From Macrostomum lignano (lineage: Eukaryota), in contig NIVC01000773.1 in NCBI GenBank assembly GCA_002269645.1, positions 62,001-126,000 on the forward strand: DNA of 64,000 nt, given 5' to 3'. Positions 29,926-63,819 of this stretch are shown here, one piece after another. The position numbers and the translations under genes were made by a program. The notes under the pieces are model-generated. The model made no database searches. It worked only from the letters and a program-made list of their open reading frames with translations, and was not told where the DNA came from. Every line of letters starts with the position of its first letter. The stretch's first letter is position 1.

Positions 29926-39635
<9,710 letters not shown>

Positions 39636-40682: not shown

Positions 40683-43600
40683 CTATGGACGGAGGGTTGG
40701 CGCCGCCCAGGGAGGTCCCCCAGTGTCGCCAGCAGCTATGGTGCTCTCTGGAAAGGAGAGTTCAGCCCTGCGGGTGGCCCGAAGGTAGCGCATGAGCTGA
40801 TTAAAGTTTTCGGGTTTGCACGCTTCAGTAATAGATGTGTGTGGCCCGAGGTAAGTGAGTCTGGCCCGCGTGAAGGCGGGACAGATGCTGACGAAATGCT
40901 CAGCGGTTTCGTCACCTGAGTTGCAGAAACTACAGGTGGCGTTGGTGGCGTTGCCCTGCAGGTACTGGTGCCTGGAGAAGCAGCCGTGACCAGAGAGGGT
41001 CATGGTGGCAGCCCGGATGTCTCTGCGCGAGAGGCGCAAGAGGAGCTTCCGGAGCTGGTGAGAGGGCTGAGGGACAGCGCCTCTGGATTGCCTGCAGTTC
41101 GTGCGGTTCGCCCAAGTCGAGCGGTGCTGAGTCCTGATCCACGCTTTGATGCGCGAGTCGATGACACAGCCAGGAATCGGGACAAGAGGTTCGGGGCCGA
41201 GAGAGGAGCCGGAGGCACCAACTTTTGCAAGGGTGTCAGCCAACTCATTTCCTCGGATCCCCACATGCCCCGGAACCCACTTAAGGGTAATTTTGTTGGC
41301 GGAACCCAACACATTGAGGAGTTTGATACAGTCAAGGACTGTAGCAGAGTTGGTGCTGCAGCCACTGATGGCGTGCAAGGCAGCTTGGCTGTCCGAATGG
41401 AAAATGATGTTCTTACCAGTAACGCCAGTGGCGAGAAGCTCTGCAGTGCAGGAGCTGATGGCCAGAACTTCATTTTGGAAAACACTGGAGTTGACCCCAG
41501 TGTATTGAGCGTGGGTAGCGATGACCCTCCCGTTCAGAAAGATTCCAACACCAAAGCCGGTGTTGGCTGACTGCTTAGAACCGTCGGTGTAGCAATGAAG
41601 CTCACCAGGGTTCCAATGGTCATTGATGTTATCGCGCGAGTCGATAGCTACGGAGTAGCGCTGTCTCAGGTTGAGCGTTGAGGCAATGCCATCGGTGAAG
41701 ACGCGATTGGCCTGACACTCGTTGAGAAAGTTGAGGCACAGATCGCTATGCGGGACAAGGTTCCGCTTAGCAGGTGCTCTCATGTAAATGAATTTGACGC
41801 CGGCATCAATTAGACGCCGCGTCGTTCTAGCCGCCTCACCCCTGATGAAGAGGTCAAGAGGCGGAAGATTAAGAAAGGCCCCCATGCCAGCAAAGGGCGT
41901 GGACCTGGTGGCGTTGCAGATGAGCCTACACGCTCTGCCTTGGATCGTGTTGAGCAGGTCTGCATGGCTTTTGACCTGGGTAGCGCTAACCCAGACAACA
42001 GAGGCGTACGTAATGGCAGGTCTAACTACGGAAGTATAGATCCACCAAAGCCGCTTTGGGGATAGACCCCAAGAAGTGCCAAGTGCTCGTCGGAGCTGGG
42101 CCAGGATGGCTGAGGCACGCTTAGCTTTTGCTTTCACGTGGAAGGACCAGTTGAGCCGGTGGTCAAGTGTGACCCCGAGACATCTGGTCTGGTGCGCGAA
42201 GGCAATATCTCTGCCGTAGAGCTGCAGAGGACGTATGTTCCAGCGTAGTCTGCTGGTAAACATAATGGCAACGGTTTTGGGCTCAGAGAGTTCCAAACCA
42301 TTGTCATTGGCCCAGGATTCTGCTTTGCGGATAAAGCTCTGCATCAGATCCCTGAGCGTGCTGGGAGACGGTCCTGCCACAATGGCCGTGACGTCATCAG
42401 CATACCCGACTTTGAAGACGGGGTCAGGTCGGGAGTCACTCAGAAGAGCGTCCATGACCAGGTTCCAGAGCGTCGGGGTGAGGACTCCGCCTTGGGGTCC
42501 ACCCTTACAGACTCTGGTGGAGGCAGTTTGCCCAAGAAGTTGGGCAGTGACCGTACGGTTGGAGATCATGTACATGATCCACCGTATGAGGGTAGCATGA
42601 GCTTTGCGATTTTGAAGGGCCCTCTGAAACGCTTCAAAGATAACGTTGTCGAAGGCGCCAACAATGTCAAGAAAGAGAGCCAGGGCGTAACCGTCACCCA
42701 GTACCGCCCGTTTAATCTTTTCGACAATCGCATGCAGGGAGCTGTCAGTCGACCTCCCGGTACGGAAGGCGTGCTGATTATTGCTGAGGGGCATCGCTGT
42801 CAGCTCGCAGGAGAGCAGCCGCCAGAGAATAAGCCTCTCAGTGAGCTTAAGCATTGCTGACGTTAAGCTAATTGGCCGGAAGGCCTTGACGCTTTGGTAG
42901 TCACCCTTCCCAGGTTTGGGAATAAAGACTACTCGAGCTTCAGTCCAGCTTTTGGGAACGTATCCCAGCTGGATAGAGGCCCGCATAAGATTGCGGGTGA
43001 GTCTCAGGAACGAGGGTATCTTGGCTGCTTCACGAAGGAGAACAGGGTAGATACCATCAGGTCCAGGAGATTTGAAGGGTTTGAAGGTTCTGACCGCACG
43101 AGCGATTAGGTCTTCAGTGACAATGCCCGCCGCTAGGGTGGCTCCATCCATCGAATGGTTGGGCTCCGGTCTAGCAGTAGGTACCCTCGGGAAGAATGTG
43201 CTAAGCATATGCTGAAGCACTTCTTCAGGGTCTTTAGTAAGAGAGCCATCATCTTTTTTGATCATGGCTAATTTGGACATTTTGTCCATTGTAAGGGCCT
43301 TGACAAGCCTAGAAGTAGGTCTGTCTTGATCCAATTCATTGCAGAATTGGCGCCACTTACATTCCTTGGCCTTGCGCACTTCAGATTTGAAATTGCGGGA
43401 GGCTTGCCGGAAAAGCTCCATGTCCTCCGGGTTTCCGGTCTTCATGGCACGGCGATGAAGGCTTTTGGCCTTCCGCCTGAGTTTCCCCAGCTCCGGGTTC
43501 CACCACGGCGCCGAGGTCTTGCCTCTGTAGGCGCGAGCAGGACAAGCCGCTTCGTAGGCTGCAATAATGCAACCTGTCAGCGTCTCAGCCATATGATCCA

Positions 43601-44423
43601 CATCCTCGCAGGTCTCAATCGGACGTAAGTCCGTGAGTTCCTGCAGGTGCAGATCAAGGGCAGCCTTGTAGGCCGCCCAATCAGTGTTGCGGATATTGCG
43701 TCTCCAAGTGATCGGAGACTGGGTTTTAGTGTCCGCGATATTAAAGGCGATAAAGCAGTGGTCAGACAGGGAGGGCTCCTCAGACCAGACTCTCCACTCC
43801 TTGACTCTGTCAAAGAGTCTTGGGGTAACGAGTGTGGCGTCGAGGACCTCGGTCCATCTGCCATTATTAAAGGTAGGAGTGCTGCCGCGGTTGCAGAGCA
43901 TGAGGTTTGTGTTAGAGATGAGGGCCAGAAGCTCCTCTCCTCTAGTGTTGGTATCTTTGCTGCCCCAGTGCTTGTGGTGCGCGTTGAGGTCGCCCCCTAA
44001 GCACAGCTCAGCGTTCTGGGACTCGCAGTACTGCGCAAGGCGCAGTAAACTCTCGGGAGCAGGGTCTCTGTCGCCTGGGATATAAACCGAGGCAACAAGA
44101 CACGTACGCGGAGAGAAATGATTAGATTGGATGACGCAAAGGTCTCCATCAGAGAGATCAGTCCTCAGCCAAGCCTGGAGATGGCTAGCAGCGAGGATAG
44201 CCGCTCTAGGGCGGCTGTTCCCCGGGCCACACACATAAAAATCAGAGTAGCCAGAGGGAATGTTGGGCAACTTACCGTTGCGCATCCAGGGTTCCTGGAT
44301 CAGGATGAGGCCTGGCCTGTACAGCTCAGCAATCTTCATCAGATTTACTGACGCAGATACGCAATGCTGTAAATTTATTTGCAGACAGAATGTCGCTCCT
44401 TTGGCAGCGTGGAGCTTAGTCAT
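40683..44423 (-). CDS. LINE ORF2: APE endonuclease, reverse transcriptase, RNase H and C-terminal Cys/His knuckle, 1246 aa
   Basis: APE: LQINL, IQEPW, GGDLNAHH, LSDH. RT: FRPISL, QHAFR, GGPQGG, YADD. RNase H: YTDGSK, NEVLAI, SDSQAAL, WVPGHVGIRGNELAD. Knuckle: CSFC...H...C. Confidence 0.98.
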   Translation of the reverse strand: MTKLHAAKGATFCLQINLQHCVSASVNLMKIAELYRPGLILIQEPWMRNGKLPNIPSGYSDFYVCGPGNSRPRAAILAASHLQAWLRTDLSDGDLCVIQSNHFSPRTCLVASVYIPGDRDPAPESLLRLAQYCESQNAELCLGGDLNAHHKHWGSKDTNTRGEELLALISNTNLMLCNRGSTPTFNNGRWTEVLDATLVTPRLFDRVKEWRVWSEEPSLSDHCFIAFNIADTKTQSPITWRRNIRNTDWAAYKAALDLHLQELTDLRPIETCEDVDHMAETLTGCIIAAYEAACPARAYRGKTSAPWWNPELGKLRRKAKSLHRRAMKTGNPEDMELFRQASRNFKSEVRKAKECKWRQFCNELDQDRPTSRLVKALTMDKMSKLAMIKKDDGSLTKDPEEVLQHMLSTFFPRVPTARPEPNHSMDGATLAAGIVTEDLIARAVRTFKPFKSPGPDGIYPVLLREAAKIPSFLRLTRNLMRASIQLGYVPKSWTEARVVFIPKPGKGDYQSVKAFRPISLTSAMLKLTERLILWRLLSCELTAMPLSNNQHAFRTGRSTDSSLHAIVEKIKRAVLGDGYALALFLDIVGAFDNVIFEAFQRALQNRKAHATLIRWIMYMISNRTVTAQLLGQTASTRVCKGGPQGGVLTPTLWNLVMDALLSDSRPDPVFKVGYADDVTAIVAGPSPSTLRDLMQSFIRKAESWANDNGLELSEPKTVAIMFTSRLRWNIRPLQLYGRDIAFAHQTRCLGVTLDHRLNWSFHVKAKAKRASAILAQLRRALGTSWGLSPKRLWWIYTSVVRPAITYASVVWVSATQVKSHADLLNTIQGRACRLICNATRSTPFAGMGAFLNLPPLDLFIRGEAARTTRRLIDAGVKFIYMRAPAKRNLVPHSDLCLNFLNECQANRVFTDGIASTLNLRQRYSVAIDSRDNINDHWNPGELHCYTDGSKQSANTGFGVGIFLNGRVIATHAQYTGVNSSVFQNEVLAISSCTAELLATGVTGKNIIFHSDSQAALHAISGCSTNSATVLDCIKLLNVLGSANKITLKWVPGHVGIRGNELADTLAKVGASGSSLGPEPLVPIPGCVIDSRIKAWIRTQHRSTWANRTNCRQSRGAVPQPSHQLRKLLLRLSRRDIRAATMTLSGHGCFSRHQYLQGNATNATCSFCNSGDETAEHFVSICPAFTRARLTYLGPHTSITEACKPENFNQLMRYLRATRRAELSFPESTIAAGDTGGPPWAAPTLRP

Positions 44424-44462
44424 ACTGTATTAAATGCAATATCTGGCTAGAGCCCAGGGCCA

Positions 44463-46025
44463 TCAAGGAGACTTGGACAACAGATCGTCCTCGTCCCAGG
44501 CCGCTGGGGCTTGACTGGGAGATGGGAGTTGGTCGACGTCCATGGCCTCCTCACCCCCACCGGCCCCCCCAGCAGAGTCCTCAGGCTCCGATGACAGGAT
44601 GGAGGAAGCTTCCTCACCTGCATCTTTACCTTCAGACCCCACCAAGGTGGCCGAGGAGAGCTCGGATTCCGAAGACCCGGCCTCGTCCTCAACTCCTTCT
44701 CCGACTGGCAGGTTTGGTTCCCGGGGCTCGGCCGGAGCCGTTACCGCGGTCGCCGAACTGCTGCTAGCAGAGGGGCGAGATGCAGCTTTGGCTTTGGGAT
44801 CGGCTTGCGCCTTTCCTTGGGCCTTAGACTGCGCCCCGCTCTTGCCGGAGATGCCGGGGTTGGCAGTAGCCTTCCCTTTGGCAGACTTTCCTCGGCGCAA
44901 CTTGAGCTTGAGGGCACCCAGCTGGAAAGAGGATCCATTAGGGTACCGACTCGCCCAAGTGCTGGAAAGGCCGAGGACAATTGAGTTGCCCGTCTCCCCC
45001 CTGCGGACTTTGCGGTGATACACCAGTCCACTAGCAGGGAGGTCGGGGTTCAGACGCAGTAGGACCCGGCGAATAACGTCTGGTCCAGCTGCGGTGCTCT
45101 TAGCAGGGACGAAAACCACATAGGGTATCGTCTTTGGACGCTGGCCCTCGCGAAGAAAAAGAGCTCCACCAAGGTCAGCATCCAAGGAGACCGTCGGTAG
45201 CCGCTGGAGCAGCCGCCGAGCGTCCTCCTCGCTGCTAGGAGCAATAAGAACGAATGTGCTTCGCAGCACCATCCGCTCAACGCCGATGGAGATTCCCTCC
45301 TCGACAGTCAGCTCAATCAGATAGGAGTCAACAGCACTCCACACTTTTTGAAGCTGATCAGTGGTCCAGTCCTGGTCGCGACCTTGGATGATCACTCCCG
45401 GGATTTTGGCCTTGGCCTTCGCCGCAAAGGTAGCTCCCGAAGGAACCTCCTTGTTGGCAGTGGCCATTTGTTGCGCCGTGGTTTCGGCCTCAGCAGCCGC
45501 GGCAGCAGCTCCAGGGAGCGCCGCCGCTGAACTACTGGAGCTTCCACCGGCCGGCCCGCCTGGTTGCCTTGGGACTCCAGTCGCTTCAGCATCCATGGTG
45601 GACGCCGCCGCTTTGGCCCCCGCAGCTCCCTTCTTGGCCTGCCTTTTGGCGCGTTGTTTAGCGCGTTTGCGCTCAAGCCGAGCCCGCTGAGCTTCATCGG
45701 ATCTGCCAGATTTGGCCGGTCCTTTAGGCTCAGAGCTCGCGGTTCCCTTAGATCCACCAGCGGAGCTGGCAGGTCTTAGGGTATTTTGAGTTTGGTAGCT
45801 CTGGTCGGATCTGCCAGCAGAGCCAGCCGGTCCTTCCTTTGCCACAGTTGAATCAGTCGGTTGGGATCTGCCAGCAGGGCCGGCCGGTCCTTCGGACTGA
45901 GGTTGGGGTTTAGAAGGGTCCCCGTCCCTAGAAATAGCTTGTTTATCCATAGTCGGCTCGAAGGCCATGATAAAAGGTTGGTGGGCTACCCTCAAAGGGG
46001 CGCGGTACCCACCCGGCCGCTCCAC
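44463..46025 (-). CDS. LINE ORF1, low-complexity ends around a central folded domain (DUF4780-like by recall); first ATG at 45968
   Basis: 520-codon open frame ending 39 nt before the ORF2 ATG; no CCHC knuckle visible. Confidence 0.85.
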   Translation of the reverse strand: MERPGGYRAPLRVAHQPFIMAFEPTMDKQAISRDGDPSKPQPQSEGPAGPAGRSQPTDSTVAKEGPAGSAGRSDQSYQTQNTLRPASSAGGSKGTASSEPKGPAKSGRSDEAQRARLERKRAKQRAKRQAKKGAAGAKAAASTMDAEATGVPRQPGGPAGGSSSSSAAALPGAAAAAAEAETTAQQMATANKEVPSGATFAAKAKAKIPGVIIQGRDQDWTTDQLQKVWSAVDSYLIELTVEEGISIGVERMVLRSTFVLIAPSSEEDARRLLQRLPTVSLDADLGGALFLREGQRPKTIPYVVFVPAKSTAAGPDVIRRVLLRLNPDLPASGLVYHRKVRRGETGNSIVLGLSSTWASRYPNGSSFQLGALKLKLRRGKSAKGKATANPGISGKSGAQSKAQGKAQADPKAKAASRPSASSSSATAVTAPAEPREPNLPVGEGVEDEAGSSESELSSATLVGSEGKDAGEEASSILSSEPEDSAGGAGGGEEAMDVDQLPSPSQAPAAWDEDDLLSKSP

Positions 46026-47411: not shown

Positions 47412-48182
47412 TTTCGGTGCTTCATTTTTATTATAAAGTACATTTAACCGTGCTCACTTGTTCGCCAGCCTTCAGCATAGAGTGACCACGCGATTGGGTT
47501 CACTTTGTCTGTACATCAAATAATTGCTACAGCTTTTTAACAAAATTCAATCAAGTTCACTCGCACTTAGCTTTGAAAATTGGAGTTAGTTGTGTATCTT
47601 ACTATATAATTTCGTGATATATCTAGGCTGATGCACCAGTTCAGACTTCATAGCCTGTAAAGTTTAACGAAATTTATGATTGATTCATTTGTGTCACTTG
47701 CCCTGTCACGATTGCAACAACTCGTGTTGTCCCTGTCCGCGTACGTGTGTTTAAATATATTATTCTATCTATATGACTATTGTTTTTGATTACCGATTAA
47801 AACTGCAATTTTAAATTCAGCAACACGTGCTGTGTGTTTGTAGCTGAGCTAATTATGGCTAATTATAATTGCAATTTCTTTATCTATTATGCCCAGTGGT
47901 GAGGTCTCATCACACAATGGCATACATGTAACAGTGTCTGCACCGGTTCGCTCGTACTTACCAGTTAACTGTCTCACCTATGCTAGTCAAAAAGCATTGA
48001 GAATTGGCACATGGCGTCTGTAGCTTCAAATTCTCAGCCTGGGAGTCTACGAATGGTTTTGAGTTTCGCGAATATCCCGCAGCCATGCAGGTACTCTTTG
48101 TCTGGCTGTACCCTAACCTGTTTCTGAACCTATTTTTCCTGCCTGCTACCCTTTCTACCTACTTCTCTCCCTACCTATACTC

Positions 48183-50488
48183 TTCGATGCAGAACTGGAG
48201 ACTGCAGGACGTCAAGTCCAACTTCAAGGCCAACCAAGTGCGTCTTAAAAGTTTGCACTAGTTGTTAAAAAGCAGTATTTATTATTTAATTTCATTTTTA
48301 TTCCTTTGTCATTATAAAAATTTCCCTACTCCTGTAAAATCACAGATAGCACCGCAACCGCTGCTCTACGATAAATCTTCCCTCTCAATCATGCACGGCG
48401 TCACAGGTGGGCTAGCCGTGTCAACGCGAACTCGATATGTTCCAGACACTGCTCGGACAGAGATGCAGTACAGCATCAATATCCATGTCCAGGACACATC
48501 CTCTTCGGAATTCCAAGCAGCAGTGCAGTGTACGCTGAAGCACACAAGTCAGGGTTCTCTGCTCTTGTTGCGTCATGGAGTGAGTTCAACGACCAAGTTC
48601 GTCGCTACGTAAAGGCCAACACTTCTGAATTTTCAGACCTCTTTACCTCATGGAGCGGATTCCAGGACGAAGTCCGCCGGTACGTAGAGCAGTACACATC
48701 GAGATTCTGTGGCATATTTACCTCATGGAGCGGCTTCGATGCTCAAGTGCGGCAGTATGTACTAAGCCATGAAGGAGAATTCGCTACACTTCTTGGAGTG
48801 AGCTCTAAAGCTCCAGACACTTCATCGTCGGAATTCCGTGCTTTAGTTCTTAAATACATCGAAGAAAACAAAACAGACTTCACTAATATCTTTGCAAGTT
48901 GGAACACTTGGCGATCACGTGCGTCTCTATTTGAAGGCCCATACCTCCGAGTTTTTCGACATATTTACGTCGTGGAGTGGCTTTGAATCACAAGTTCGAA
49001 TATATATTCAAACGTATAAAGAGCAATACAGCGACTTACAACTCTCCAAAACAGAGGAGATTGACACATCTCCAGAATTCCGCGCCTTGGTGCTGAGGTA
49101 CTCCCAAGAGCACAAGCCAGAGTTCTCAGCCATCTTCATCACATGGAGCGAGTTTGGCGACCAAGTGCACCGCTACGCGAAAGAGCACACGTCGGAGTTC
49201 TCCAGCATCTTTGTCTCGTAGAGCGGATTCCGCAGCCAAGTGCGTAGCTACGTGCAGGAGAACACTTCGGAGTTCTCTGACATCTATCTCAACTGGGAGG
49301 GTTTCGAGCCGCAAGTGCGTGAATATGTGCAGAAACAGGAAAGCAAGTTTGTCGAGCTTCTCCCCGTCAGGACTAAAGAGATTGACACTTCGTCGCCAGA
49401 GTTCCGCGCCATGGTGCTGAGATACGTTGAGGAGCACAAATCGGAGTTTACCTTTATCTTCGCCACGTGGAACATTTTCAGCGACTACGTGCAGCGCTAC
49501 GTTAAAGAGAACACGTGGGAGTTCACAGAAATCTTCTCCTGGAGCGGAGTCGAAAGTCAGATTAGAAATCATGTGCGTAAGAACTCAGAGAAATTCTCCG
49601 CCCAGATCACTGTGCAGGCGAAGGAGATCGACACGTCGTCGCCAGAATTCCGCGCCTCCGTGCGGAAGTACGTCCAAGCAAACAAGTCAGAATTTACCGC
49701 CATGTTCGTTACCTGGAACGAGTTCGAGGATCAAGTGCGCCGCTACGTCGAAGAGCACACACATCGGAGTTCTCTAGCATCTTTGTGTCGTGGAGTGGAT
49801 TCGAAACTCAAGTTCGGCAGTATATTCGAACACACGAATACAAGTTTAGTGAGCTGAAACAGCCTGATTCCTCGTCACCGGAGTTTCGCTCAATGGTTTT
49901 AAAGTACGTTCGAGAACACTTTCCAGAGTTTCTATGACCTTTTCATCTTAGAGCGCCTTTGAAATTCGGCGTTATGTTCTTCAGCACGATACAGAGTTTA
50001 TTGCGTTGCTTGGCTGCATTCGCGAAAAGGATAAACAGACTTTGCAACTGATTTCCTCCAGTGGCTGTTGTAATGAGATTTCATGGACAATTTCTGAATC
50101 TGTTTTTCACTATGAACGAAACGATGAATCTTTATCTGTGATCCATTCAGGCAAACCAGCCGTTGGAATGACGGCCTTTGAGCCACCAAATGCAGCTGAC
50201 GAAAGACTTGAAAGAAATTTGTCTGACTTAAGCACAGGATTCTCGTTCGTTCATAGACCTACGCTCGTACAACATCTGGCGACATCAAAACAACTGAATC
50301 AAGAGAGTACATGTCGTTCGGATCTCGAACAGAGTCGGTTCCCTTCGGTGTTCAGGGCATTGTATCGGGAGCTACTGGATCACGCGCCGTTAACATCGGC
50401 GGATCGGACGGAGAGATGCTAGACTTATCCGGATCGAGAACTAGCCGATATTCAGCCTACCCAGGGAGAGTCGTATGGAATATCGGAT
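48183..50488 (+). pseudogene. Decayed partial duplicate of the plakin-like gene's 3' part (half exon, intron, diverged 83-aa repeats, about one 69-aa unit)
   Basis: 48183-48350 is near-identical to 57343-57510. The repeat motif DTSSxEFRALV..YVEE recurs across several frames with stops (ORFs 48528, 48892, 49240). 50309-50488 matches the 69-aa repeat DNA. Confidence 0.88.
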
Positions 50489-51689: not shown

Positions 51690-52881
<1,192 letters not shown>

Positions 52882-53439: not shown

Positions 53440-53765
53440 CTATATGGGACTGGAGTGGGATTCTGTAGGGACTGGAGTAGGATTCTGTAGGGACTGAAGT
53501 GGGATTCTGTAGGGACTGGAGTAGGATTCTGTAGGGACTGAAGTGGGATTCTGTAGGGACTGAAGTGGGATTCTGTCGGGACTGAAGTGGGATTCTGTCG
53601 GGACTGAAGTGGGATTCTGTCGGGACTGAAGTGGGATTCTGTAGGGACTGGAGTAGGATTCTGTAGGGACTGAAGTGGGATTCTGTCGGGAGTGAAGTGG
53701 GATTCTGTAGGGACTGGAGTGGGATTCTGTAGGGACTGGAGTGGGATTCTGTAGGGACTGGAGTG
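53440..53765. repeat. 22-bp minisatellite (gtgggattctgtagggactgaa)
   Basis: Direct tandem periodicity. Confidence 0.95.
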
Positions 53766-53873
53766 AGACAATTAAACATCTTTATCATTTGCTTTTTCAT
53801 GGACCTTGTTGGCATTTTTCGGTCATGGTGACAAAAAATTTTCGTCAACTTCACCGCAAATACTCGCTGACAG

Positions 53874-56800
53874 GTGACCCTTGATCGCCTCTCAATGACG
53901 GCTGTGGCGACGACGCATCAGCAGGAGATTGATCAGTGGCTGCATGACAACCGAAATGACGTGGAGTCAGCTGCCATCGGCTGCACTCACCAGGCGCTGC
54001 TGTTTCAGAAAACCAAGCAGGCGGTCCTGCTGGAGGAGATCCAAGCGCTTGAGAGCAGGCTGGACGAGTCCAACAAGTCAGCGGCAGCGTCCCTCACCAA
54101 GCTGAAGGCAATGGAGAGTCAGATTGGCGTGAACGAGGAGGCGCTGACTTACCTCCAGCAGGTGACGTCGCTTGAGACGGCAGTTATGTCAGCCGGTCAG
54201 CAAGTGATGGAGAAGGCACTGCAGATGTCCAAAGTGACCGATGGAGTCGTCCTGGAAGCCAAGAAGGTGAGAAAAGAACTCAACCTTATTGAAAATCTGT
54301 GCGAATACAGTTGACCAAAAAAATCTACATACGAGCCTCGTATGTCAATTTCTAAGCTGCAAGGGAGTAGGCTAATAAGATTGGGGTGAATTTATGAGTA
54401 TGCCATGTGTATGAAGGTCCGATGTTACGGTGGGCGGCAACCTTGCTTGTGATCTGGGTGTATGAGTTTATCAAACTCAGGCGTCGACAAAATCTACATC
54501 CAGAGACAGATGAGAGAGGAGAGAGAATTAAGAAGAGAGAAGAGTTGAGAGAGTAGAGAGGAGAGAGAAGATTAGATGAGAGGTAGGATCAGAAAGTCTA
54601 GAAAACAATTTAATGTCCTATTTCAATCCAAAATCTTGACGGCTCTCTAGAAGCTACTGGTAGAACAAGACAGCTGATGAAGCAAGAAACGGGTAAAGCC
54701 ATATACTACGCTACTCGTAGTTAGAAAATCGAATTGGCGAATATTTCCTCCCAGGAGCTGTCGGCCGAGGTCCACGGCACCTGGAGCTGGGTGAGCCAGC
54801 TGGCCGACCTGAACCGGCTCCACACCCGCAACGCCGCGGACTACCAGACCTTCCACCACAGCGCCTACGAGCTCAACGCCATGCTTAACAGCCGAGCCAG
54901 CAGCAGCAGCGCCGCCATTGCCGCCATTCCCGCCAACGGGATGCTGGGCTCCATCAAACGCATAAACACCGTGCTCACTGTGAGTAACCTCTTGTCAGTT
55001 TCAATATGGGCTTGAAATACTCAAACCGCACACTTCAAAAGTAAAAGCCTCCTCGAACCTCTGCAGGACAACTTGGCCCAGTTCAACCGGCTGTGGCAGC
55101 TGTCAGTCGACCTGACGCAGCGCAGCCGAGCTGTGGTGCCGCTGCACCTGCGTTTCAGCACTGACGCCATCCCGTTCGCGGGCAAGAACGTGTTCAAGTT
55201 CGATGACGGCGAGGTAAGTGCCAACTGTATTGCAGAGTGAATTGCATATTTGATGGCGCTCGCCCCATCATATTCGGACACCTGCGAGTGGAAGTTGCGC
55301 CTGCGAACCTCTGCACGCTACTGACTGAGTAGTGCCGAGAGAAAATGAAATGAAAATTAAAAACGGCAAAGCAATTAGCATACCCACAATAAAAATGATG
55401 GGTGTCTACACGTACTCCTAGAATGCGGGACTGGTCCTGGGCTATCGCAAGGTTGTTTTACTTCCTCCTAGCCTTCCGTTACTTTTTCTCCTAATTGGAA
55501 ACCAAGCCCTTTTGAGTGGCGCATTTGCCAGTATTTCAAATATTTGCACAAAAAAATTCTGTTGTCTTCCGTACGATCGTATGGCCTCTCACTCCCCACA
55601 GACGGTCCTGGAGCCGGGAGAGCAGGTGACTGTCATCGACAACTCCCAGTCCTACACGTGGACGGTGAGGCGCTCGGATGGAAGCGAGGTCAAAGTGCCC
55701 AGCACCTGCATCTGGCTGCCGCCGGCCGATCCGCAGGCAGTGCAGCTCGCTATCGGGTTTGTGGGAATCTTATTATAAAAATACTTCTTTATTGCTCACT
55801 CCTTGTCTTGAGCGCATGAAGTCTTAAAAGTGCTTTGATAATTAAAAAAAGATTAGGCATTTAGAAAAGCAGTAGTTTTGCATTTAAGAACTGAAAAGCG
55901 AACTCGTTGCGGTTTTTAGGCTGAGAAGAAAGCTGCTGAACACCTGGTCTCAGGTTCTGAACAGTCTGCGACAGTGGATCGCCGAGTTCTTTGATTCCTA
56001 CTTGACCCAGATGCTCAAGAGCCCTGTGGTGAGTGCTTTTTGATCATTCGAGTGAAAATTTTCTGATCATAATAACCATACCGTTACACCTAAAAACAAA
56101 AGCCAGCTTTAGCGTGTAGTTAATATATAGGATAGCAGTTTGCGACGTTTGCAAAGTGCTTTCGGAGTGGAGATACTGAACGATCTGTGTTCGCTTTTTC
56201 TTTTATTGCAATCGAAACTCGCGACGAAATCGACTGCTTTGGGCGCGGTGGGCACTCTTGAGTTCTCAAAGAGCCAGGCGCAACAGTCAAGCTGTATCGG
56301 TGCACTCCTTAAAACAAAATTGTGCTATTCTTTGAACATTTAATCGTGCAGACAGATTCTTTATTGCATTTTGGTATTTCTTTTTATATAACACTAAATA
56401 TGAAAAGTGATACATAGAATGGCTTTATTTCAAGTTGAAGCATTAGTTTTTAGCTACTTTTATAATAGCATCCAAGGATTCTCCACCTCAGCTTATACAT
56501 ACGCCACTTGCATATAAATATACTTATGTATAGACATGCTTTTTATAGTACTCGTAAAAGTACAATTTTCAAATCTACCCATTGCCGTCTACAGGGGGTA
56601 GCCAAAAAAAATCAAGGACGCTGTGACTGAATTTCTTAATTCGCTGCGTCAGTCGAGCCAAACATTCCTGGGCGTTGACGATCAGTTTACGGATCGCATT
56701 GTCAAATCCATCGATAAAGTGCTTGAAAAGATGACAATCTGCGGTGAGAATCTGATTCAAAAATACCTTATTAATACCAGAATACTTTTCTGTAAACCAA

Positions 56801-59800
56801 CTAATTCGATGCAAGTTTTAGTGAAGAAATGTACCCGTAAATGCAGAAGTAAAGTACTTTGATGCTTATTAATGTCCCATGAACGAATTTTTTGTTTACT
56901 TTAGAAGGTCCAACGGCATCCCTAGTGGACAGAGAACTAATAATTCTAAAGGCCTGTCTAGCCAAGCTACAGGAGCACCTGAACGAATGGCGTCATTGCT
57001 CAAATGAAGCTACAGAAGCTGAGACCGAGCTGCAAGGCCGGACCGCTTTATCGAAGGAGTCTTCTGAAGTTCTGGTGCGCATCGAACTGCTTTCGTAAGT
57101 CGGACGGACCATTTTGATTTGCTGGAATTTATCTTGTTAGGCGTGGCGTGCGTTCTGACACCTCCCACCTCTGAGGCCACTTGTGGTCGGCGTGAGGTGC
57201 AAATTTTTGTTGTTCTTGTTAGACTTTTGTAATCACACGTGATTAAAATACATGTAGTCTAAAGGGACTGCACTTTAATTTCTCTTTTCACAAGCAGACA
57301 GCTGCAAGAAGAGTCCCAGTCTAAGTTTGAGGAGCTACAGCGTTCGATGCAGAACTGGAGACTGCAGGACGTCAAGTCCAACTTCACGGCCAACCAAGTG
57401 CGTCATAAAAGTTTGCACTAGTTGTTAAATGGCAGCATTTATTATTTAATTTCTCTTTTTAATTAGTCATTATAAAAATTTCCCTACTCCTGTAAACATC
57501 GCAGAGAGCACCGCAACCGCTGTTCTACGATATATCTTCGCTCTCAATCATGCACAGCGTCACAGGAAGACCTGCCGTGTCAACGCGAACTCTTAATGTT
57601 CCAGACACATCTGAGACAGACGAGCAATACAATAAAAGATCAGAAGAAAAAGTTACTGCTGAACTAACGGTGAAAAAATACAATATTGACACTTCGTCTT
57701 CGGAATTCCGTGCACTGGTACAGAAGTACGTCGAAGAGAACAAGTCGGATTTCGCAGCGATTTTTAGCACCTGGAGTGAGTTCAAGGAGCAAGTGCGTCT
57801 GTACGTCGAGGAGCACACGTCAGAGTTCTTGAACGTTTTCACCAAGTGGAGTGGCTTCGATGATTATGTTCGAAAATATGTGCAGCAGAACGAAGAAAAG
57901 TTCATCACAGTGCCTGCCGTCAAGACTAAGGAGATAGACACTTCATCTTCGGAATTCCGTGCACTGGTGCAGAAATACGTCGAAAAGAACAAGACCGAGT
58001 TTATCGCCTTATTCGTTACCTGGAGTGAGTTCGAAGAACAAGTGCGTCGCTACGTCGAAAAGAACACATCGAAGTTCTCTAGCATCTTTTTTTCGTGGAG
58101 CGGATTCGAAAGAAAAGTCAAGCAGTACGTGGTGAAGAATGAAGAGAAGTTTGCTACGCTTCTTCCCGTCAAGTCCAAGGAGATAGACACTTCGTCTTCG
58201 GAATTCCGTGCACTGGTGCAGAAGTACGTCGAAGAGCACAAGACTGAGTTTACCGCCATGTTCGTTACTTGGAGTGAGTTCGAGGAGCAAGTGCGTCGCT
58301 ACGTCGAAGATAACACATCGAAGTTCTCTAGCATCTTCTTTTCGTGGAGTGGATTCGAAAGCAAAGTCAAGCAATACGTGGTGAAGAATGAAGACAAGTT
58401 TGCTACGCTTCTTCCCGTCAAGACTAAGGAGATAGACACTTCATCTTCGGAATTCCGTGCACTGGTGCAGAAATACGTCGAAAAGAACAAGACCGAGTTT
58501 ATCGCCTTATTCGTTACCTGGAGTGAGTTCGAAGAACAAGTGCGTCGCTACGTCGAAAAGAACACATCGAAGTTCTCTAGCATCTTCTTTTCGTGGAGTG
58601 GATTCGAAAGCAAAGTCAAGCAATACGTGGTGAAGAATGAAGACAAGTTTGCTACGCTTCTTCCCGTCAAGACCAAAGAGATAGACACTTCGTCTTCGGA
58701 ATTCCGTGCACTGGTACAGAAGTACGTCGAAGAGAACAAGTCGGATTTCGCAGCGATCTTTAGCACCTGGAGTGAGTTCAAAGAGCAAGTGCGTCTGTAC
58801 GTCGAGGAGCACACGTCAGAGTTCTCGAACGTTTTCACCAAGTGGAGTGGCTTCGATGATTACGTTCGAAAATATGTGCAGCAGAACGAAGAAAAGTTCA
58901 TCACAGTGCCTGCCGTCAAGACCAAAGAGATAGACACTTCGTCTTCGGAATTCCGTGCACTGGTACAGAAGTACGTCGAAGAGCACAAGACCGAGTTTAC
59001 CGCCATGTTTGTTACTTGGAGTGAGTTCGAGGAGCAAGTGCGTCGCTACGTCGAAGAGAACACATCGAAGTTCTCTAGCATCTTTTTTTCGTGGAGCGGA
59101 TTCGAAAGCAAAGTCAAGCAATACGTGGTGAAGAATGAAGACAAGTTTGCTACGCTTCTTCCCGTCAAGACCAAAGAGATAGACACTTCGTCTTCGGAAT
59201 TCCGTGCACTGGTACAGAAGTACGTCGAAGAGAACAAGTCGGATTTCGCAGCGATTTTTAGCACCTGGAGTGAGTTCAAAGAGCAAGTGCGTCTGTACGT
59301 CGAGGAGCACACGTCAGAGTTCTCGAACGTTTTCACCAAGTGGACTGGCTTCGATGATTATGTTCGAAAATATGTGCAGCAGAACGAAGAAAAGTTCATC
59401 ACAGTGCCTGCCGTCAAGACTAAGGAAATAGACACTTCGTCTTCGGAATTCCGTGCACTGGTACAGAAGTACGTCGAAGAGCACAAGTCGGATTTCGCAG
59501 CGATCTTTAGCACCTGGAGTGAGTTCAAAGAGCGAGTGCGTCTGTACGTCGAGGAGCACACGTCAGAGTTCTCGAACGTTTTCACCAAGTGGACTGGCTT
59601 CGATGATTATGTTCGAAAATATGTGCAGCAGAACGAAGAAAAGTTCATCACAGTGCCTGCCGTCAAGACTAAGGAAATAGACACTTCGTCTTCGGAATTC
59701 CGTGCACTGGTACAGAAGTACGTCGAAGAGCACAAGACCGAGTTTACCGCCATGTTCGTTACTTGGAGTGAGTTCGAAGAACAAGTGCGACGCTACGTCG

Positions 59801-62800
59801 AAGAGAACACATCAAAGTTCTCTAGCATCTTTTTTTCGTGGAGTGGATTCGATGAAAAAGTGCGTTGGTATGTCGAAAGCCATGTGTCTAAGTTTAGTGA
59901 TATCTTCGTTAATTGGACCGGTTTTGAAGCAAAAGTTCAACAGTACGTGATGCAAAATGAAGAAAAGTTTAAAATATTGTTTGATGTTAAAAGCACTGAG
60001 CCTGATCTTTCATCACCAGAATATCGGGAATTGGTTTTAAAGTACATTCAAGAAAACATGTCCGAGCTTTTTATCATTTTTACAACCTGGAGTGGTTTTA
60101 CGGCTCAAATCCGTCGCTATGTTCAGCAGCACGAAGACGATTTTATTAAGCTGCTAGGCTGCGTTCGCGAATCAAAAAGTTCAATCCACACAGGCGAATC
60201 GCTTAAAATATCGGATACAGTGAAGACGACCGAAAACAGCGAGTACAAGTCGTTCGGATCTCGAACGGAGACGGCTCCTGTCGGTGTTCAGGGCATTGTA
60301 TCGGAAGCTACTGGGTCACGCGCCGTTAACATCGGCGGATCGGACGGAGAGATGCTAGACTTATCCGGATCGAGAACTAGCCGATATTCGGCCTTCCCAG
60401 GAGAGTCGTATGGAACGTCGGATACAGTGAAGACGACCGAAAGCAGCGAGTACAAGTCGTTCGGATCTCGAACGGAGACGGCTCCTGTCGGTGTTCAGGG
60501 CATTGTATCGGAAGCTACTGGGTCACGCGCCGTTAACATCGGCGGATCGGACGGAGAGATGCTAGACTTATCCGGATCGAGAACTAGTCGATATTCAGCC
60601 TTCCCAGGAGAGTCATATGAAACGTCGGATACAGTGAAGACGACCGAAAGCAGCGAGTACAAGTCGTTCGGATCTCGAACGGAGACGGCTCCTGTCGGTG
60701 TTCAGGGCATTGTATCGGAAGCTACTGGGTCACGCGCCGTTAACATCGGCGGATCGGATGGAGAGATGCTAGACTTATCCGGATCGAGAACTAGCCGATA
60801 TTCAGCCTTCCCAGGAGAGTCGTATGGAATATCGGATACAGTGAAGACGACCGAAAGCAGCGAGTACAAGTCGTTCGGATCTCGAACGGAGACGGCTCCT
60901 GTCGGTGTTCAGGGCATTGTATCGGGAGCTACTGGGTCACGCGCCGTTAACATCGGCGGATCGGACGGAGAGATTCTAGACTTATTCGGATCGAGAACTA
61001 GCCGATATTCCGCCTTCCCAGGAGAGTCGTATGGAATATCGGATACAGTGAAGACGACCAAAAGCAGCGAGTACATGTCGTTCGGATCTCGAACGGAGAC
61101 GGCTCCTGTCGGTGTTCAGGGCATTGTATCGGAAGCTACTGGGTCACGCGCCGTTAACATCGGCGGATCGGACGGAGAGATGCTAGACTTATCCGGATCG
61201 AGAACTAGCCGATATTCGGCCTTCCCAGGAGAGTCGTATGGAACGTCGGATACAGTGAAGACGACCGAAAGCAGCGAGTACAAGTCGTTCGGATCTCGAA
61301 CGGAGACGGCTCCTGTCGGTGTTCAGGGCATTGTATCGGAAGCTACTGGGTCACGCGCCGTTAACATCGGCGGATCGGACGGAGAGATTCTAAACTTATT
61401 CGGATCGAGAACTAGCCGATATTCAGCCTTCCCAGGAGAGTCGTATGGAACGTCGGATACAGTGAAGACGACCAAAAGCAGCGAGTACATGTCGTTCGGA
61501 TCTCGAACGGAGACGGCTCCTGTCGGTGTTCAGGGCATTGTATCGGAAGCTACTGGGTCACGCGCCGTTAACATCGGCGGATCGGACGGAGAGATTCTAA
61601 ACTTATTCGGATCGAGAACTAGCCGATATTCGGCCTTCCCAGGAGAGTCGTATGGAACGTCGGATACAGTGAAGACGACCAAAAGCAGCGAGTACATGTC
61701 GTTCGGATCTCGAACGGAGACGGCTCCTGTCGGTGTTCAGGGCATTGTATCGGGAGCTACTGGATCACGCGCCGTTAACATCGGCGGATCGGATGGAGAG
61801 ATGCTAGACCTATCCGGATCGAGAACTAGCCGATATTCAGCCTTCCCAGGAGAGTCATATGAAACGTCGGATACAGTGAAGACGACCGAAAGCAGCGAGT
61901 ACATATCGTTCGGATCTCGAACGGAGACGGCTCCTGTCGGTGTTCAGGGCATTGTATCGGGAGCTACTGGATCACGCGCCGTTAACATCGGCGGATCGGA
62001 CGGAGAGATGCTAGACCTATCCAGATCGAGAACTAGCCGATATTCAGCCTTCCCAGGAGAGTCATATGAAACGTCGGATACAGTGAAGACGACCGAAAGC
62101 AGCGAGTACATGTCGTTCGGATCTCGAACGGAGACGGCTCCTGTCGGTGTTCAGGGCATTGTATCGGGAGCTACTGGGTCACGCGCCGTTAACATCGGCG
62201 GATCGGACGGAGAGATGCTAGACTTATCCGGATCGAGAACTAGCCGATATTCGGCCTTCCCAGGAGAGTCGTATGGAACGTCGGATACAGTGACGACGAC
62301 CGAAAGCAGCGAGTACAAGTCGTTCGGATCTCGAACGGAGACGGCTCCTGTCGGTGTTCAGGGCATTGTATCGGAAGCTACTGGGTCACGCGCCGTTAAC
62401 ATCGGCGGATCGGACGGAGAGATTCTAAACTTATTCGGATCGAGAACTAGCCGATATTCAGCCTTCCCAGGAGAGTCGTATGGAATATCGGATACAGTGA
62501 AGACGACCGAAAGCAGCGATTACATGTCGTTCGGATCTCGAACGGAGACGGCTCCTGTCGGTGTTCAGGGCATTGTATCGGAAGCTACTGGGTCACGCGC
62601 CGTTAACATCGGCGGATCGGACGGAGAGATGCTAGACTTATCCGGATCGAGAACTAGCCGATATTCGGTCTTCCCAGGAGAGTCGTATGGAACGTCGGAT
62701 ACAGTGAAGACGACCGAAAGCAGCGAGTACAAGTCGTTCGGATCTCGAACGGAGACGGCTCCTGTCGGTGTTCAGGGCATTGTATCGGAAGCTACTGGGT

Positions 62801-63819
62801 CACGCGCCGTTAACATCGGCGGATCGGACGGAGAGATTCTAAACGTATTCGGATCGAGAACTAGCCGATATTCAGCCTTCCCAGGAGAGTCGTATGGAAT
62901 ATCGGATACAGTGAAGACGACCGAAAGCAGCGAGTACATGTCGTTCGGATCTCGAACGGAGACGGCTCCTGTCGGTGTTCAGGGCATTGTATCGGGAGCT
63001 ACTGGGTCACGCGCCGTTAACATCGGCGGATCGGACGGAGAGATGCTAGACTTATTCGGATCGAGAACTAGCCGATATTCAGCCTTCCCAGGAGAGTCGT
63101 ATGGAACGTCGGATACAGTGAAGACGACCGAAAGCAACGAGTACAAGTCGTTCGGATCTCGAACGGAGACGGCTCCTGTCGGTGTTCAGGGCATTGTATC
63201 GGAAGCTACTGGGTCACGCGCCGTTAACATCGGCGGATCGGATGGAGAGATGCTAGACCTATCCGGATCGAGAACTAGCCAATATTCGGCCTTCCCAGGA
63301 GAGTCGTATGGAACGTCGGATACAGTGAAGACGACCGAAAGCAGCGAGTACAAGTCGTTCGGATCTCGAACGGAGACGGCTCCTGTCGGTGTTCAGGGCA
63401 TTGTATCGGAAGCTACTGGGTCACGCGCCGTTAACATCGGCGGATCGGACGGAGAGATGCTAGACTTATCCGGATCGAGAACTAGCCGATATTCGGCCTT
63501 CCCAGGAGAGTCGTATGGAACGTCGGATACAGTGAAGACGACCGAAAGCAGCGAGTACAAGTCGTTCGGATCTCGAACGGAGACGGCTCCTGTCGGTGTT
63601 CAGGGCATTGTATCGGAAGCTACTGGGTCACGCGCCGTTAACATCGGAGGATCGGATGGAGAGATGCTAGACCTATCCGGATCGAGAACTAGCCGATATT
63701 CAGCCTTCCCAGGAGAGTCGTTTGGAACATCAGGTGCCGTCACCCACTTCAGTGAAAGTGACAGTGCTAGTCCTCTATTCTCATTCACGGGTGGCCGCAT
63801 GCGAAATATTGTAGACTAG
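53874..63819 (+). CDS. Plakin-domain (spectrin repeat/SH3) protein with a giant repetitive tail, about 2590 aa as assembled; exons 53874-54266, 54755-54979, 55067-55213, 55602-55756, 55920-56028, 56602-56743, 56905-57094, 57298-57397, 57505-63819; 5' end unresolved
   Basis: GT-AG junctions are phase-compatible and the total of 7776 nt is divisible by 3. TWSWVSQL..HTRNAADYQTF, RSRAVVPLHLR and EPGEQVTVIDNSQSYTWTV...VKVPSTCIWLPPADPQAV match the recalled plakin spectrin-repeat/SH3 region (QWSWILQL, IVPLK.R, KGE.C.L.DNS..W.V..VPSVCF.IPPP). The acceptor at 56601 is weak. Confidence 0.8.
57688..60150 (+). repeat. Coding 249-bp (83-aa) repeat, 9 full units plus a diverged partial tenth
   Basis: DTSSSEFRALVQKYVE recurs every 249 nt (57688, 57937, ...). 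Confidence 0.95.
60214..63732 (+). repeat. Coding 207-bp (69-aa) S/T/G-rich repeat, 17 near-identical units
   Basis: DTVKTTES recurs every 207 nt from 60214 to 63526. Confidence 0.97.

What the first reader, a model, noticed from the sequence alone, without database searches (positions are those of the whole stretch)
53874..63819. Plakin domain fused to a 6.3-kb exon of two unrecognised repeat types instead of a canonical plakin tail
Seen: spectrin-repeat/SH3 plakin exons splice in frame into a ~2100-codon exon with about ten 83-aa units followed by seventeen 69-aa S/T/G-rich units. No plectin repeats, EF-hand or GAR domain is visible in the window. Known: plakins use their C-termini to bind intermediate filaments or microtubules at junctions. 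Inference: a lineage-specific cytolinker with a new tail, plausibly an anchoring, adhesion or muscle-attachment component. The S/T-rich array could be a phospho-regulated or elastic spacer.
Basis: partly seen in the sequence, partly recalled or inferred. Interest (0 to 1): 0.75.

Follow-up and report, generated by a model that had tools for sequence, protein, structure and literature searches.

The report
Flatworm plakin-head gene with orphan repeat tail
This is a real gene of the flatworm Macrostomum lignano that joins a shortened plakin (junction and cytoskeleton linker) head to a 6.3-kb exon of two repeat types found nowhere else, and it belongs to a small tandem gene family; its function has not been tested.

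Summary
The window is Macrostomum lignano contig NIVC01000773.1, about 62001-126000. Nine + strand exons (53874-63819), all GT-AG and in frame, give a protein of about 2,590 aa.

- **Head.** The head matches the plakin SH3 (Pfam SH3_10, full length only after splicing, E=5.6e-11). It also matches desmoplakin and plectin SR4-SH3-SR5 structures (E about 1e-8 to 1e-9).
- **Giant exon.** It holds 8 exact 83-aa units, one 108-aa unit and one short unit. Together these are thirty 25-aa aromatic modules predicted to be helical. Exactly seventeen 69-aa S/T/G-rich units follow.
- **No known relatives.** Neither repeat matches Pfam, PDB sequences, or (83-aa repeat only) PDB folds. Among 1.84 billion representative proteins only M. 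lignano paralogs match.
- **Selection.** Both repeat types are under purifying selection (dN/dS 0.13-0.25).
- **No conventional parts.** There is no actin-binding domain upstream. No plakin tail appears in what was checked of 23 kb downstream.
- **Family.** The gene sits between a decayed partial copy upstream and an intact tandem paralog downstream. The paralog carries a different array (49-aa, Cys/Tyr-rich) and the same C-terminal end.

"Lineage-specific, new tail" holds. "Cytolinker" remains inference. An unreviewed UniProt model already contains this architecture, and the NCBI model is chimeric and skips the exon.

The parts
53874..54266 (+). Exon 1: helical, spectrin-like (roughly SR4). 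The acceptor AG is at 53872-53873. The first internal ATG is at 53895. This is the likely 5' end of the coding sequence.
   Evidence: GT-AG model. A CAG|GTGA acceptor and a nearby Met are conserved in the downstream paralog, while sequence further upstream is not. Pfam Spectrin is only E=0.06. The M. lignano spliced leader ends in ATG and the exon is in phase 0 with the acceptor (PMC8629364; inference).
54755..54979 (+). Exon 2: first helices of the SH3-bearing spectrin repeat (SR5).
   Evidence: Aligned to desmoplakin 3R6N and plectin 3PE0. Splice model.
55067..55213 (+). Exon 3: end of the helix plus the N-terminal half of the plakin SH3 (SH3 part about 55139-55213).
   Evidence: SH3_10 profile positions 1-65 are matched only across the exon 3/4 junction.
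55602..55756 (+). Exon 4: C-terminal half of the plakin SH3 (about 55602-55721).
   Evidence: Pfam PF17902 SH3_10 E=4e-10 on the exon alone and E=5.6e-11 when spliced.
55920..56028 (+). Exon 5: helix following the SH3.
   Evidence: dN/dS against the paralog is 0.31.
56602..56743 (+). Exon 6. The acceptor is uncertain. 56602 keeps the frame with the A8 run present in the window. Public models use 56595 with a 7-A run.
56905..57094 (+). Exon 7: helical.
   Evidence: dN/dS of exons 5+7 against the paralog is 0.16.
57295..57397 (+). Exon 8: helical. It has a tandem NAGNAG acceptor (57295 or 57298), which adds or drops one Arg.
57505..57687 (+). Start of the giant exon 9: a linker conserved among paralogs (..APQPLFYD.SSLSIMHSVTG..AVSTRT..).
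57688..60210 (+). Array of thirty 25-aa modules, S[EG]FxxxVxxYVxxxxxxFxxxFxxW. They are grouped as 8 x 83 aa (two subtypes, A and B) + 108 aa + 58 aa + a short linker.
   Evidence: AlphaFold2 gives an all-alpha model at pLDDT 59.6. dN/dS between subtypes A and B is 0.15-0.25. Only M. lignano homologs were found.
60211..63729 (+). Seventeen 69-aa units (207 nt). They are 45% S/T/G, net charge -3 per unit, with three GSR motifs each, and are predicted disordered.
   Evidence: AlphaFold2 pLDDT 28.6. No homolog outside the family. dN/dS against the paralog's unit is 0.13.
63730..63819 (+). Unique C-terminal tail ..FTGGRMRNIVD and the TAG stop (63817-63819).
   Evidence: The paralog ends ..LEGRMLNLSD-stop.
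48175..50470 (+). A related feature, not part of the gene: a decayed, 5'-truncated copy of a giant exon. It has 83-aa-type modules in shifting frames and one 69-aa unit at 50281-50466.

Best explanation
This is a protein-coding gene of Macrostomum lignano (NIVC01000773.1, about 115,874-125,819). It encodes a cytoplasmic protein of about 285 kDa built from three parts.

1. **Head.** An N-terminally truncated plakin domain: spectrin-repeat helices with the plakin-type SH3 inserted, roughly SR4-SR6. There is no calponin-homology actin-binding domain.
2. **Middle.** Thirty 25-aa aromatic modules, predicted helical, arranged as 83-aa triplets.
3. **Tail.** Seventeen copies of a 69-aa S/T/G-rich acidic module with a conserved core (FGSRTE ... 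VNIGGSDGEMLDLS), then a short conserved C-terminal end.

It belongs to a family found only in M. lignano in the proteins searched, duplicated in tandem. All members share the head, at least three 25-aa modules and the C-terminal module. Each member has amplified a different internal unit.

**Shown:** the gene structure, the plakin-head homology, the orphan status of the repeats, purifying selection on both repeat types, the absence of a canonical tail in the product and in the parts of the 23 kb downstream that were checked, and the family organisation.

**Inferred mechanism (about 35-40% likely):**
- The protein acts as a structural scaffold or linker.
- The plakin head docks at a membrane-junction or cytoskeletal site, as plakin domains do.
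- The helical array forms an extended rod.
- The multivalent 69-aa modules bind a partner, or act as a regulated flexible region.
- The mRNA probably starts at a spliced-leader acceptor at 53873.

The confidence of 0.55 is for the whole statement. The structural part alone would be about 0.85.
For: **Organism and locus.**

**Gene structure.**
- In-frame GT-AG chain.
- The same junctions appear in independent models A0A1I8GR27 and A0A1I8HNL6.

**Plakin head.**
- SH3_10 is reconstituted only by splicing exons 3 and 4.
- Desmoplakin and plectin are the only PDB hits, E=1e-8 to 1e-9.

**Repeat anatomy.**

**Orphan status.**
- Pfam.
- PDB sequence profiles.
- Foldseek.
- Exhaustive HMMER.

**Coding constraint.**
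- Variable sites between 83-aa units pile up at third codon positions, 41 of 78.
- dN/dS is 0.15-0.25 between 83-aa subtypes, and 0.16 for exons 5+7 against the paralog.
- dN/dS is 0.13 for the 69-aa unit against the paralog's unit.

**Cytoplasmic.**
- No hydrophobic segment: maximum 19-residue Kyte-Doolittle hydropathy is 1.02.
- The N-terminus (MTAVATTHQQEIDQW...) is not hydrophobic, so it does not look like a signal peptide. This is by eye; no predictor was run.

**True C-terminus.**
- A similar end motif followed by a stop occurs in the paralog.
- Intergenic simple repeats follow, and there are no Pfam hits in the first ~2.4 kb after the stop.

**Family.**

**What plakin domains do.** PMC5979291.

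**Spliced-leader context.** PMC5730564 and PMC8629364.
Against: - No transcript or protein evidence could be examined directly.
- The transcriptome-guided NCBI model BOX15_Mlig010347g1 skips the giant exon. It proves chimeric: exons 1-2 of this gene joined to exons 3-9 of the paralog.
- The head is short for a plakin domain and very diverged. Word-indexed searches found no non-Macrostomum relative.
- No cytoskeleton-binding module was detected.
- The AlphaFold2 models have low confidence, so 'rod' and 'disordered' are weak statements.
- Within the 69-aa array pN/pS is 0.67, so the amplification itself looks recent and weakly constrained.
- No poly(A) signal lies near the stop.
- The assembly has a homopolymer discrepancy at exon 6.
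Confidence: 0.55

Rival explanations
1. The family supplies building material for an intracellular dense or hard structure of Macrostomum, such as the stylet matrix, sperm bristles or a terminal web. On this view it is not a classical junction-to-filament linker. The paralog-specific arrays are the material, and the plakin head only targets or nucleates assembly.
For: - The paralogs differ mainly in which unit is amplified.
- The neighbouring gene carries about 45 copies of a 49-aa unit with 3 Cys and 4 Tyr, a composition typical of cross-linked structural proteins.
- Aromatic residues make up 17% of the 83-aa array.
- Copy number differs between assemblies.
- That flatworm hard parts are intracellular is my own background knowledge, not tested here.
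Against: There are no expression data. This gene's own arrays are acidic and almost free of Cys. Nothing links the family to any organ.
Confidence: 0.2
2. The giant exon is not, or not usually, part of the mature protein. It would be a satellite-like expansion that happens to stay open, or the locus would be a decaying duplicate.
For: - The NCBI transcript-guided model skips it.
- Tandem units whose length is a multiple of 3 can propagate an open frame without selection.
- Within-array pN/pS of the 69-aa units is 0.67.
- A decayed copy lies 4 kb upstream.
Against: - 6.3 kb is open in one frame only, whereas the upstream copy in the same assembly has several frame breaks.
- dN/dS is 0.13-0.25 for both unit types in older comparisons.
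- The exon 8/9 junction, the linker and the C-terminal end are conserved among paralogs.
- The NCBI model is demonstrably chimeric.
Confidence: 0.1
3. It is an ordinary plakin or spectraplakin. Its actin-binding and tail exons would simply lie outside the part examined.
For: - Exon 1 begins at a splice acceptor, not at an obvious promoter.
- The UniProt model A0A1I8HNL6 splices upstream sequence onto it.
- About 7% of M. lignano transcripts are multi-gene precursor RNAs that carry several trans-splice sites (PMC5730564).
Against: - The 3.4 kb upstream is microsatellite and a 22-mer array. Before that lie a decayed giant-exon copy and a LINE element.
- tblastn finds no further plakin-head exon in the window.
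- ORFs of 110 aa or more in 1-31.7 kb are repeats and transposons.
- Downstream, 5 kb of intergenic sequence is followed by the paralog and then a sulfotransferase gene.
- The upstream part of A0A1I8HNL6 is the decayed copy stitched together.
Confidence: 0.05
4. The 83-aa units are DUF285/BspA-type leucine-rich-like repeats, which is a known domain.
For: - Pfam DUF285 scores 31.3 bits on the whole array and 18.7 bits on one unit.
- Two DUF285-type proteins come up at E=1e-4 and 8e-4 in the exhaustive search.
- Both repeats have a period of 25 residues.
Against: - A single unit is below the curated cut-off of 25 bits.
- Profile-profile hhalign gives a probability of 5.5% and 14% identity.
- The modules are predicted helical.
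Confidence: 0.02

Closest known systems
Plakin family heads: desmoplakin, plectin, envoplakin, periplakin and BPAG1e
   Same: - An SH3 of the plakin type (Pfam SH3_10) is inserted in a spectrin repeat and flanked by helical repeats.
- The best and only PDB sequence matches are desmoplakin SR3-SR6 (3R6N) and plectin SR4-SR5-SH3 (3PE0).
- Like desmoplakin, envoplakin and periplakin, it has no CH actin-binding domain.
- Like many plakins, most of the protein is encoded by one very large 3' exon.
   Different: - Only about 480 aa of head (roughly SR4-SR6).
- No coiled-coil rod and no plakin-repeat domains.
- Very low identity.
- The tail consists of two orphan repeat types.
Spectraplakins: Shot, VAB-10, MACF1 and dystonin
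   Same: They share the plakin SH3 core. They also have giant repeat-encoding exons that create isoforms; for example, the shot plakin-repeat exon (PMC2173965).
   Different: No CH domains, no long spectrin rod, and no EF-hand/GAR module in the product. None in the parts of the 23 kb downstream that were checked.
Gly-Ser-Arg (GSR) C-terminal regions of plakins
   Same: The position is C-terminal and the region is Ser/Gly-rich and probably unstructured. There are 50 GSR tripeptides in the 69-aa array, three per unit where about 0.1 would be expected from the unit's composition (my estimate).
   Different: - The unit is long (69 aa) and acidic (net -3).
- It has a conserved hydrophobic core motif.
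- It is not next to a GAR or plakin-repeat domain.
- Homology cannot be tested on such low-complexity sequence.
DUF285/BspA-like 25-residue repeats
   Same: A 25-residue period with aromatic positions, and weak HMM matches.
   Different: hhalign probability is 5.5%, and the fold is predicted helical rather than beta. I treat the resemblance as a coincidence of period.

Membership tests
Plakin family | A plakin domain core: a plakin-type SH3 inserted in a spectrin repeat (SR5) next to SR4 | tested here: met
   SH3_10 PF17902 matched over 1-65/65 at E=5.6e-11. Desmoplakin 3R6N at 1.3e-9 to 1.3e-8 and plectin 3PE0 at 2e-9 to 3.7e-8, covering about aa 130-330.
Plakin family | A full plakin domain with a run of spectrin repeats on both sides of the SH3 (two pairs in PMC5979291; SR3-SR9 in my own knowledge of the structures) | tested here: inconclusive
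   There are only about 130 aa before and about 200 aa after the SH3-bearing repeat. Pfam Spectrin is E=0.06. No further head exons were found by tblastn in the window.
Plakin family | At least one filament-binding module (CH actin-binding domain, plakin-repeat domain, or EF-hand/GAR) | tested here: not met
   No such Pfam match in the 2,592-aa product or in the first ~2.4 kb downstream of the stop. Downstream ORFs are simple repeats and then the paralog.
Plakin family | Links junctional membrane proteins to cytoskeletal filaments | not testable with these tools
   This needs localisation and binding assays.
Spectraplakin | CH1-CH2 at the N-terminus, a long spectrin rod, and EF-hand plus GAR at the C-terminus | tested here: not met
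DUF285 (PF03382) repeats | A profile match above the gathering score for a unit, and profile-profile similarity | tested here: not met
   18.7 bits for one unit against a cut-off of 25. hhalign probability 5.5%.
Plakin GSR tail | A Gly-Ser-Arg-rich, basic, filament-binding C-terminal region | tested here: inconclusive
   GSR motifs are enriched, 50 in the array, but the array has a net charge of -47. Binding was not testable.

The most novel reading that the evidence does not exclude
Macrostomum has evolved its own class of giant intracellular structural proteins. A minimal plakin SR4-SH3-SR6 head is fused to fast-evolving arrays that differ between paralogs: 25-aa aromatic helical modules, a constrained 69-aa GSR/Ser-Thr module, and a 49-aa Cys/Tyr module. 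Together these would build or anchor a lineage-specific cell structure, such as the adhesive-organ anchor cells, the stylet or the sperm bristles. The 25-aa module and the 69-aa module would then be new folds or new filament-binding motifs.
Probability: 0.2. Interest if true: 0.7.

Novelty: new variant of a known kind. Interest (0 to 1): 0.45.

Why it matters
Plakins are defined by a head that docks at junctions and a tail that grips filaments. Here the head is kept in minimal form and the tail is replaced by repeat arrays unknown elsewhere. Those arrays are still under purifying selection, and they differ between tandem paralogs.

If the proteins are expressed as modelled, the family gives three things:
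- a natural experiment on what the SR4-SH3-SR5 core can do on its own;
- two candidate new repeat folds or binding motifs;
- candidate structural genes for Macrostomum-specific cell structures, in a model species where RNAi, in situ hybridisation and transgenesis are routine.

There is also an annotation point. The GenBank model at this locus is chimeric and omits 6.3 kb of coding sequence.

Tried and rejected
- **Repeat-inflated Pfam hits.** Hits on the whole giant ORF (VQ motif, DUF3106, PfUIS3, DUF285 and others) fall below cut-off on single units, so I rejected them.
- **DUF285 lead.** I followed it with hhalign and rejected it.
- **Word-indexed search with the 83-aa region.** It returned nothing, not even the known paralogs. 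This is a limit of the index. The exhaustive search superseded it.
- **Profile search with the head.** It found only M. lignano proteins.
- **Foldseek on the 83-aa model.** It gave only noise, E>3 and TM about 0.1. The model itself is poor (pLDDT 59.6).
- **AlphaFold2 with the paralog row.** I re-ran it without that row.
- **Exact look-up of A0A1I8GR27.** No contig was found.
- **Literature.** Full-text searches for Macrostomum with plakin, plectin or desmoplakin, and for Mlig010347, gave nothing. Searches of supplementary files from three papers for the gene id gave nothing.
- **Poly(A) signal.** No AATAAA lies within 740 nt of the stop, so the 3' end is undefined.
- **Pfam on raw downstream DNA references.** I repeated it with X at the stops for the first ~2.4 kb and found no hits.
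Full report
**Where we are.** The head of the predicted protein is 98% identical to UniRef A0A1I8GR27 of Macrostomum lignano. An exact look-up of a related NCBI protein returned contig NIVC01000773.1 of assembly GCA_002269645.1. Window 43895-64000 is 100% identical to positions 1-20106 of that locus, L001. The window is therefore contig positions about 62001-126000. L001 also lets me read 23 kb beyond the window's end. This assembly and its transcriptome-guided annotation are described in PMC5730564.

**The observation.**
- The 2,089-codon ORF at 57550-63819 is real.
- Tandem Repeats Finder reports a 249-nt period x 8.7 with a 498-nt super-period at 57688-59855. It also reports a 207-nt period x 17.0 with 96% matches at 60211-63728.
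- In protein terms there are eight exact 83-aa units, a 108-aa unit and a short last unit, then exactly seventeen 69-aa units, then 29 unique residues and a TAG stop.
- The 83-aa units come in two subtypes: A is units 1, 5, 7 and 8; B is units 2, 3, 4 and 6. Subtypes differ by 24-29% at nucleotide level.
- Each unit is really three copies of a 25-aa module, S[EG]FxxxVxxYVxxxxxxFxxxFxxW, plus an 8-aa linker. There are 30 modules in all.

**Splicing.**
- Reading the DNA, I built a nine-exon model in which every intron is GT-AG.
- The frame runs unbroken from 53874 to 63819, giving 2,592 codons.
- Three things support the model independently of my reading:
  1. The Pfam SH3_10 profile is matched over its full length (1-65/65, E=5.6e-11) only across the exon 3/4 junction (compare).
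  2. The public models A0A1I8GR27 (623 aa) and A0A1I8HNL6 (2,314 aa), which appear to come from another assembly, use the same junctions, including exon 8 into the giant exon.
  3. More distant paralogs (P0003-P0005) keep the same exon 8/9 junction and linker.
- Two borders are ambiguous:
  - Exon 6 starts at 56602 in the window, which has an A8 run. It starts at 56595 in the public models, which imply A7.
  - Exon 8 has a NAGNAG acceptor (57295 or 57298).

**The head.**
- phmmer against all PDB sequences finds only desmoplakin 3R6N (E=1.3e-8) and plectin 3PE0 (E=3.7e-8). Both align to residues about 133-329, that is SR4-SR5 with the SH3.
- A family profile gives the same two hits at about 1e-9.
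- Pfam Spectrin is only marginal.
- So this is a real but very diverged plakin core. Word-indexed searches of 5.8 billion proteins found no relative outside M. lignano.

**The 5' end.**
- Exon 1 starts at a splice acceptor. An in-frame stop lies two codons upstream in the genomic sequence, and the first Met is seven codons in.
- The downstream paralog conserves the CAG|GTGA acceptor and a nearby Met, but not the sequence further upstream.
- About 30-39% of M. lignano genes are trans-spliced to a spliced leader, and the leader ends in ATG (PMC5730564, PMC8629364).
- Exon 1 is in phase 0 with the acceptor in both paralogs.
- I therefore infer a spliced-leader acceptor at 53873. This is inference, not shown.
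- Upstream there is no room for further head exons nearby. The sequence holds:
  - (ATCT)n at 51691-52881;
  - a 22-mer array at 53446-53765;
  - a decayed giant-exon copy at 48175-50470;
  - a LINE element at 40683-46025.
- tblastn with the head finds nothing else in the window.

**Are the repeats known?** No.
- Pfam hits on the whole ORF are inflated by repetition. Single units have no hit above cut-off.
- Profile searches of PDB sequences give nothing significant.
- An exhaustive HMMER search of 1.84 billion representative proteins used a contiguous 470-aa piece spanning both repeat types.
  - It found only M. lignano paralogs for the 83-aa part.
  - It found two weak DUF285-type proteins (E=1e-4 and 8e-4).
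  - It found nothing for the 69-aa part.
- The DUF285 lead fails profile-profile comparison (probability 5.5%). The two repeats merely share a 25-residue period.
- AlphaFold2 predicts each 25-aa module as helix-break-helix, at low confidence (pLDDT 59.6). Foldseek against the PDB gives only noise.
- Three 69-aa units are predicted unstructured (pLDDT 28.6). The alignment was shallow, so a new fold cannot be excluded.

**Is it coding and constrained?** Yes.
- Only one frame is open over 6.3 kb.
- Variable sites between 83-aa units concentrate at third codon positions, 41 of 78.
- dN/dS is 0.15-0.25 between 83-aa subtypes.
- dN/dS is 0.16 for exons 5+7 and 0.30 for exon 1 against the downstream paralog.
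- dN/dS is 0.13 for the 69-aa unit against the paralog's equivalent module.
- Within the 69-aa array pN/pS is 0.67, as expected for a recent amplification.
- The conserved core of the 69-aa module is FGSRTE ... V(N/S)IGGSDGEMLDLS.
- The array has 50 GSR tripeptides but a net charge of -47. There is no transmembrane-like segment anywhere in the protein.

**What lies downstream.**
- After the stop come about 5 kb with many stops in all + strand frames, plus simple repeats.
- The first ~2.4 kb has no Pfam match.
- Then a tandem paralog begins: exon 1 at L001 25167, SH3 exon at 27824.
- Its giant exon starts at 31882. The 49-aa array has several frame breaks, and the C-terminal region sits in a separate ORF (40008-41006).
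- The paralog has a single 83-aa unit and about 45 copies of a different 49-aa Cys/Tyr-rich unit.
- It then has a non-amplified, degenerate version of the 69-aa module and ends ..LEGRMLNLSD-stop. This gene ends ..TGGRMRNIVD-stop.
- A sulfotransferase gene follows.
- The stop at 63817 is thus very likely the true C-terminus. No conventional plakin tail follows.

**Public annotation.**
- The GenBank protein BOX15_Mlig010347g1 (P0002) consists of exons 1-2 of this gene joined to exons 3-9 of the paralog. It jumps over 15 kb, including the whole giant exon.
- Exons 1-4 of the two genes are 93-99.5% identical, flanks included. Mis-joining of multi-mapping reads is therefore the likely cause.
- The model is not good evidence that the exon is skipped, but it is the only transcript-derived model I could see.
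- UniProt A0A1I8HNL6 contains the architecture, with 6 rather than 8 canonical 83-aa units and at least 12 of the 69-aa units before it is cut off. It also stitches the upstream decayed copy onto exon 1.
- So the sequence is public but uncharacterised. I found no paper on it.

**Interpretation.**
- The secure part: this is a new variant of the plakin theme, found only in M. lignano in the proteins searched. It has a minimal plakin head and a tail made of two orphan, selected repeat types, and it belongs to a tandem family whose members amplify different units.
- The mechanism is inference:
  - the head docks, as plakin domains do (PMC5979291);
  - the helical modules make an extended rod;
  - the 69-aa modules provide many copies of a conserved short core for binding or regulation.
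- A serious rival is that the family supplies material for an intracellular dense structure. The Cys/Tyr-rich neighbour points that way.
- Without expression data I cannot choose between these two readings.

Noticed in passing
window 48175-50470 (+): A decayed, 5'-truncated copy of a giant exon of the same family. The intron end and linker motif are present. The 83-aa-type modules run in at least three shifting frames with stops. One 69-aa unit at 50281-50466 is about 85% identical to this gene's units. The copy is closer to paralogs P0003-P0005.
   Followed up: partly
L001 25167-41006 (contig NIVC01000773.1, 5-21 kb beyond the window end): An intact-looking tandem paralog. Its exons 1-4 are 93-99.5% identical to this gene, flanks included, which suggests gene conversion, while exons 5-8 are only 70-84% identical. 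Its giant exon carries about 45 copies of a 49-aa Cys/Tyr-rich unit (ASGCFKQITLEPASVTCDWRPKYDNSGCYYETSYQASSAKFILPAPTLT), with four frame breaks early in the array. The breaks could be assembly errors or decay.
   Followed up: partly
L001 10001-33123 (GenBank gene BOX15_Mlig010347g1): The deposited gene model is chimeric. It joins exons 1-2 of this gene to exons 3-9 of the downstream paralog. Its C-terminus is an out-of-frame reading of the 49-aa repeat.
   Followed up: yes
window 56604-56611: A run of 8 A at the start of exon 6. Public protein models imply 7 A (..SPVGVAKKIKD..). With 8 A the frame is kept only by an acceptor 7 nt downstream (..SPVPKKIKD..). This is either a homopolymer error or an allele.
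   Followed up: partly
window 40683-46025 (-): A LINE-type retrotransposon with a 1,246-aa endonuclease/reverse-transcriptase-like ORF (40683-44423) and a 520-aa ORF1 (44463-46025). It lies just upstream of the decayed copy. I identified it by reading the translation only.
   Followed up: no
window 51691-52881 and 53446-53765: An (ATCT)n microsatellite of about 298 units and a 22-nt tandem array of 14.5 units fill most of the space between the decayed copy and exon 1. They create spurious ORFs in several frames on both strands.
   Followed up: yes
window 25691-26611 (-) and 33249-35138 (+): A mariner-like transposase ORF of 306 aa, and three overlapping ORFs in a row (241, 206 and 241 aa, in different frames) that look like a hAT-type transposase. 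I judged both by eye only.
   Followed up: no
window 11784-13106 (+) and 18578-19279 (-): Two copies in opposite orientation of the same unit. Each has an identical unique part of about 85 aa followed by a satellite with a roughly 20-aa (about 60-nt) period. They may be the ends of a large inverted duplication or of a transposable element.
   Followed up: no
P0010 = UniProt A0A1I8HNL6, compared with window 57688-63729: The other public copy has 6 rather than 8 canonical 83-aa units, and one 65-aa unit among its 69-aa units. This is either copy-number variation between haplotypes or collapse of repeats in the assembly.
   Followed up: partly
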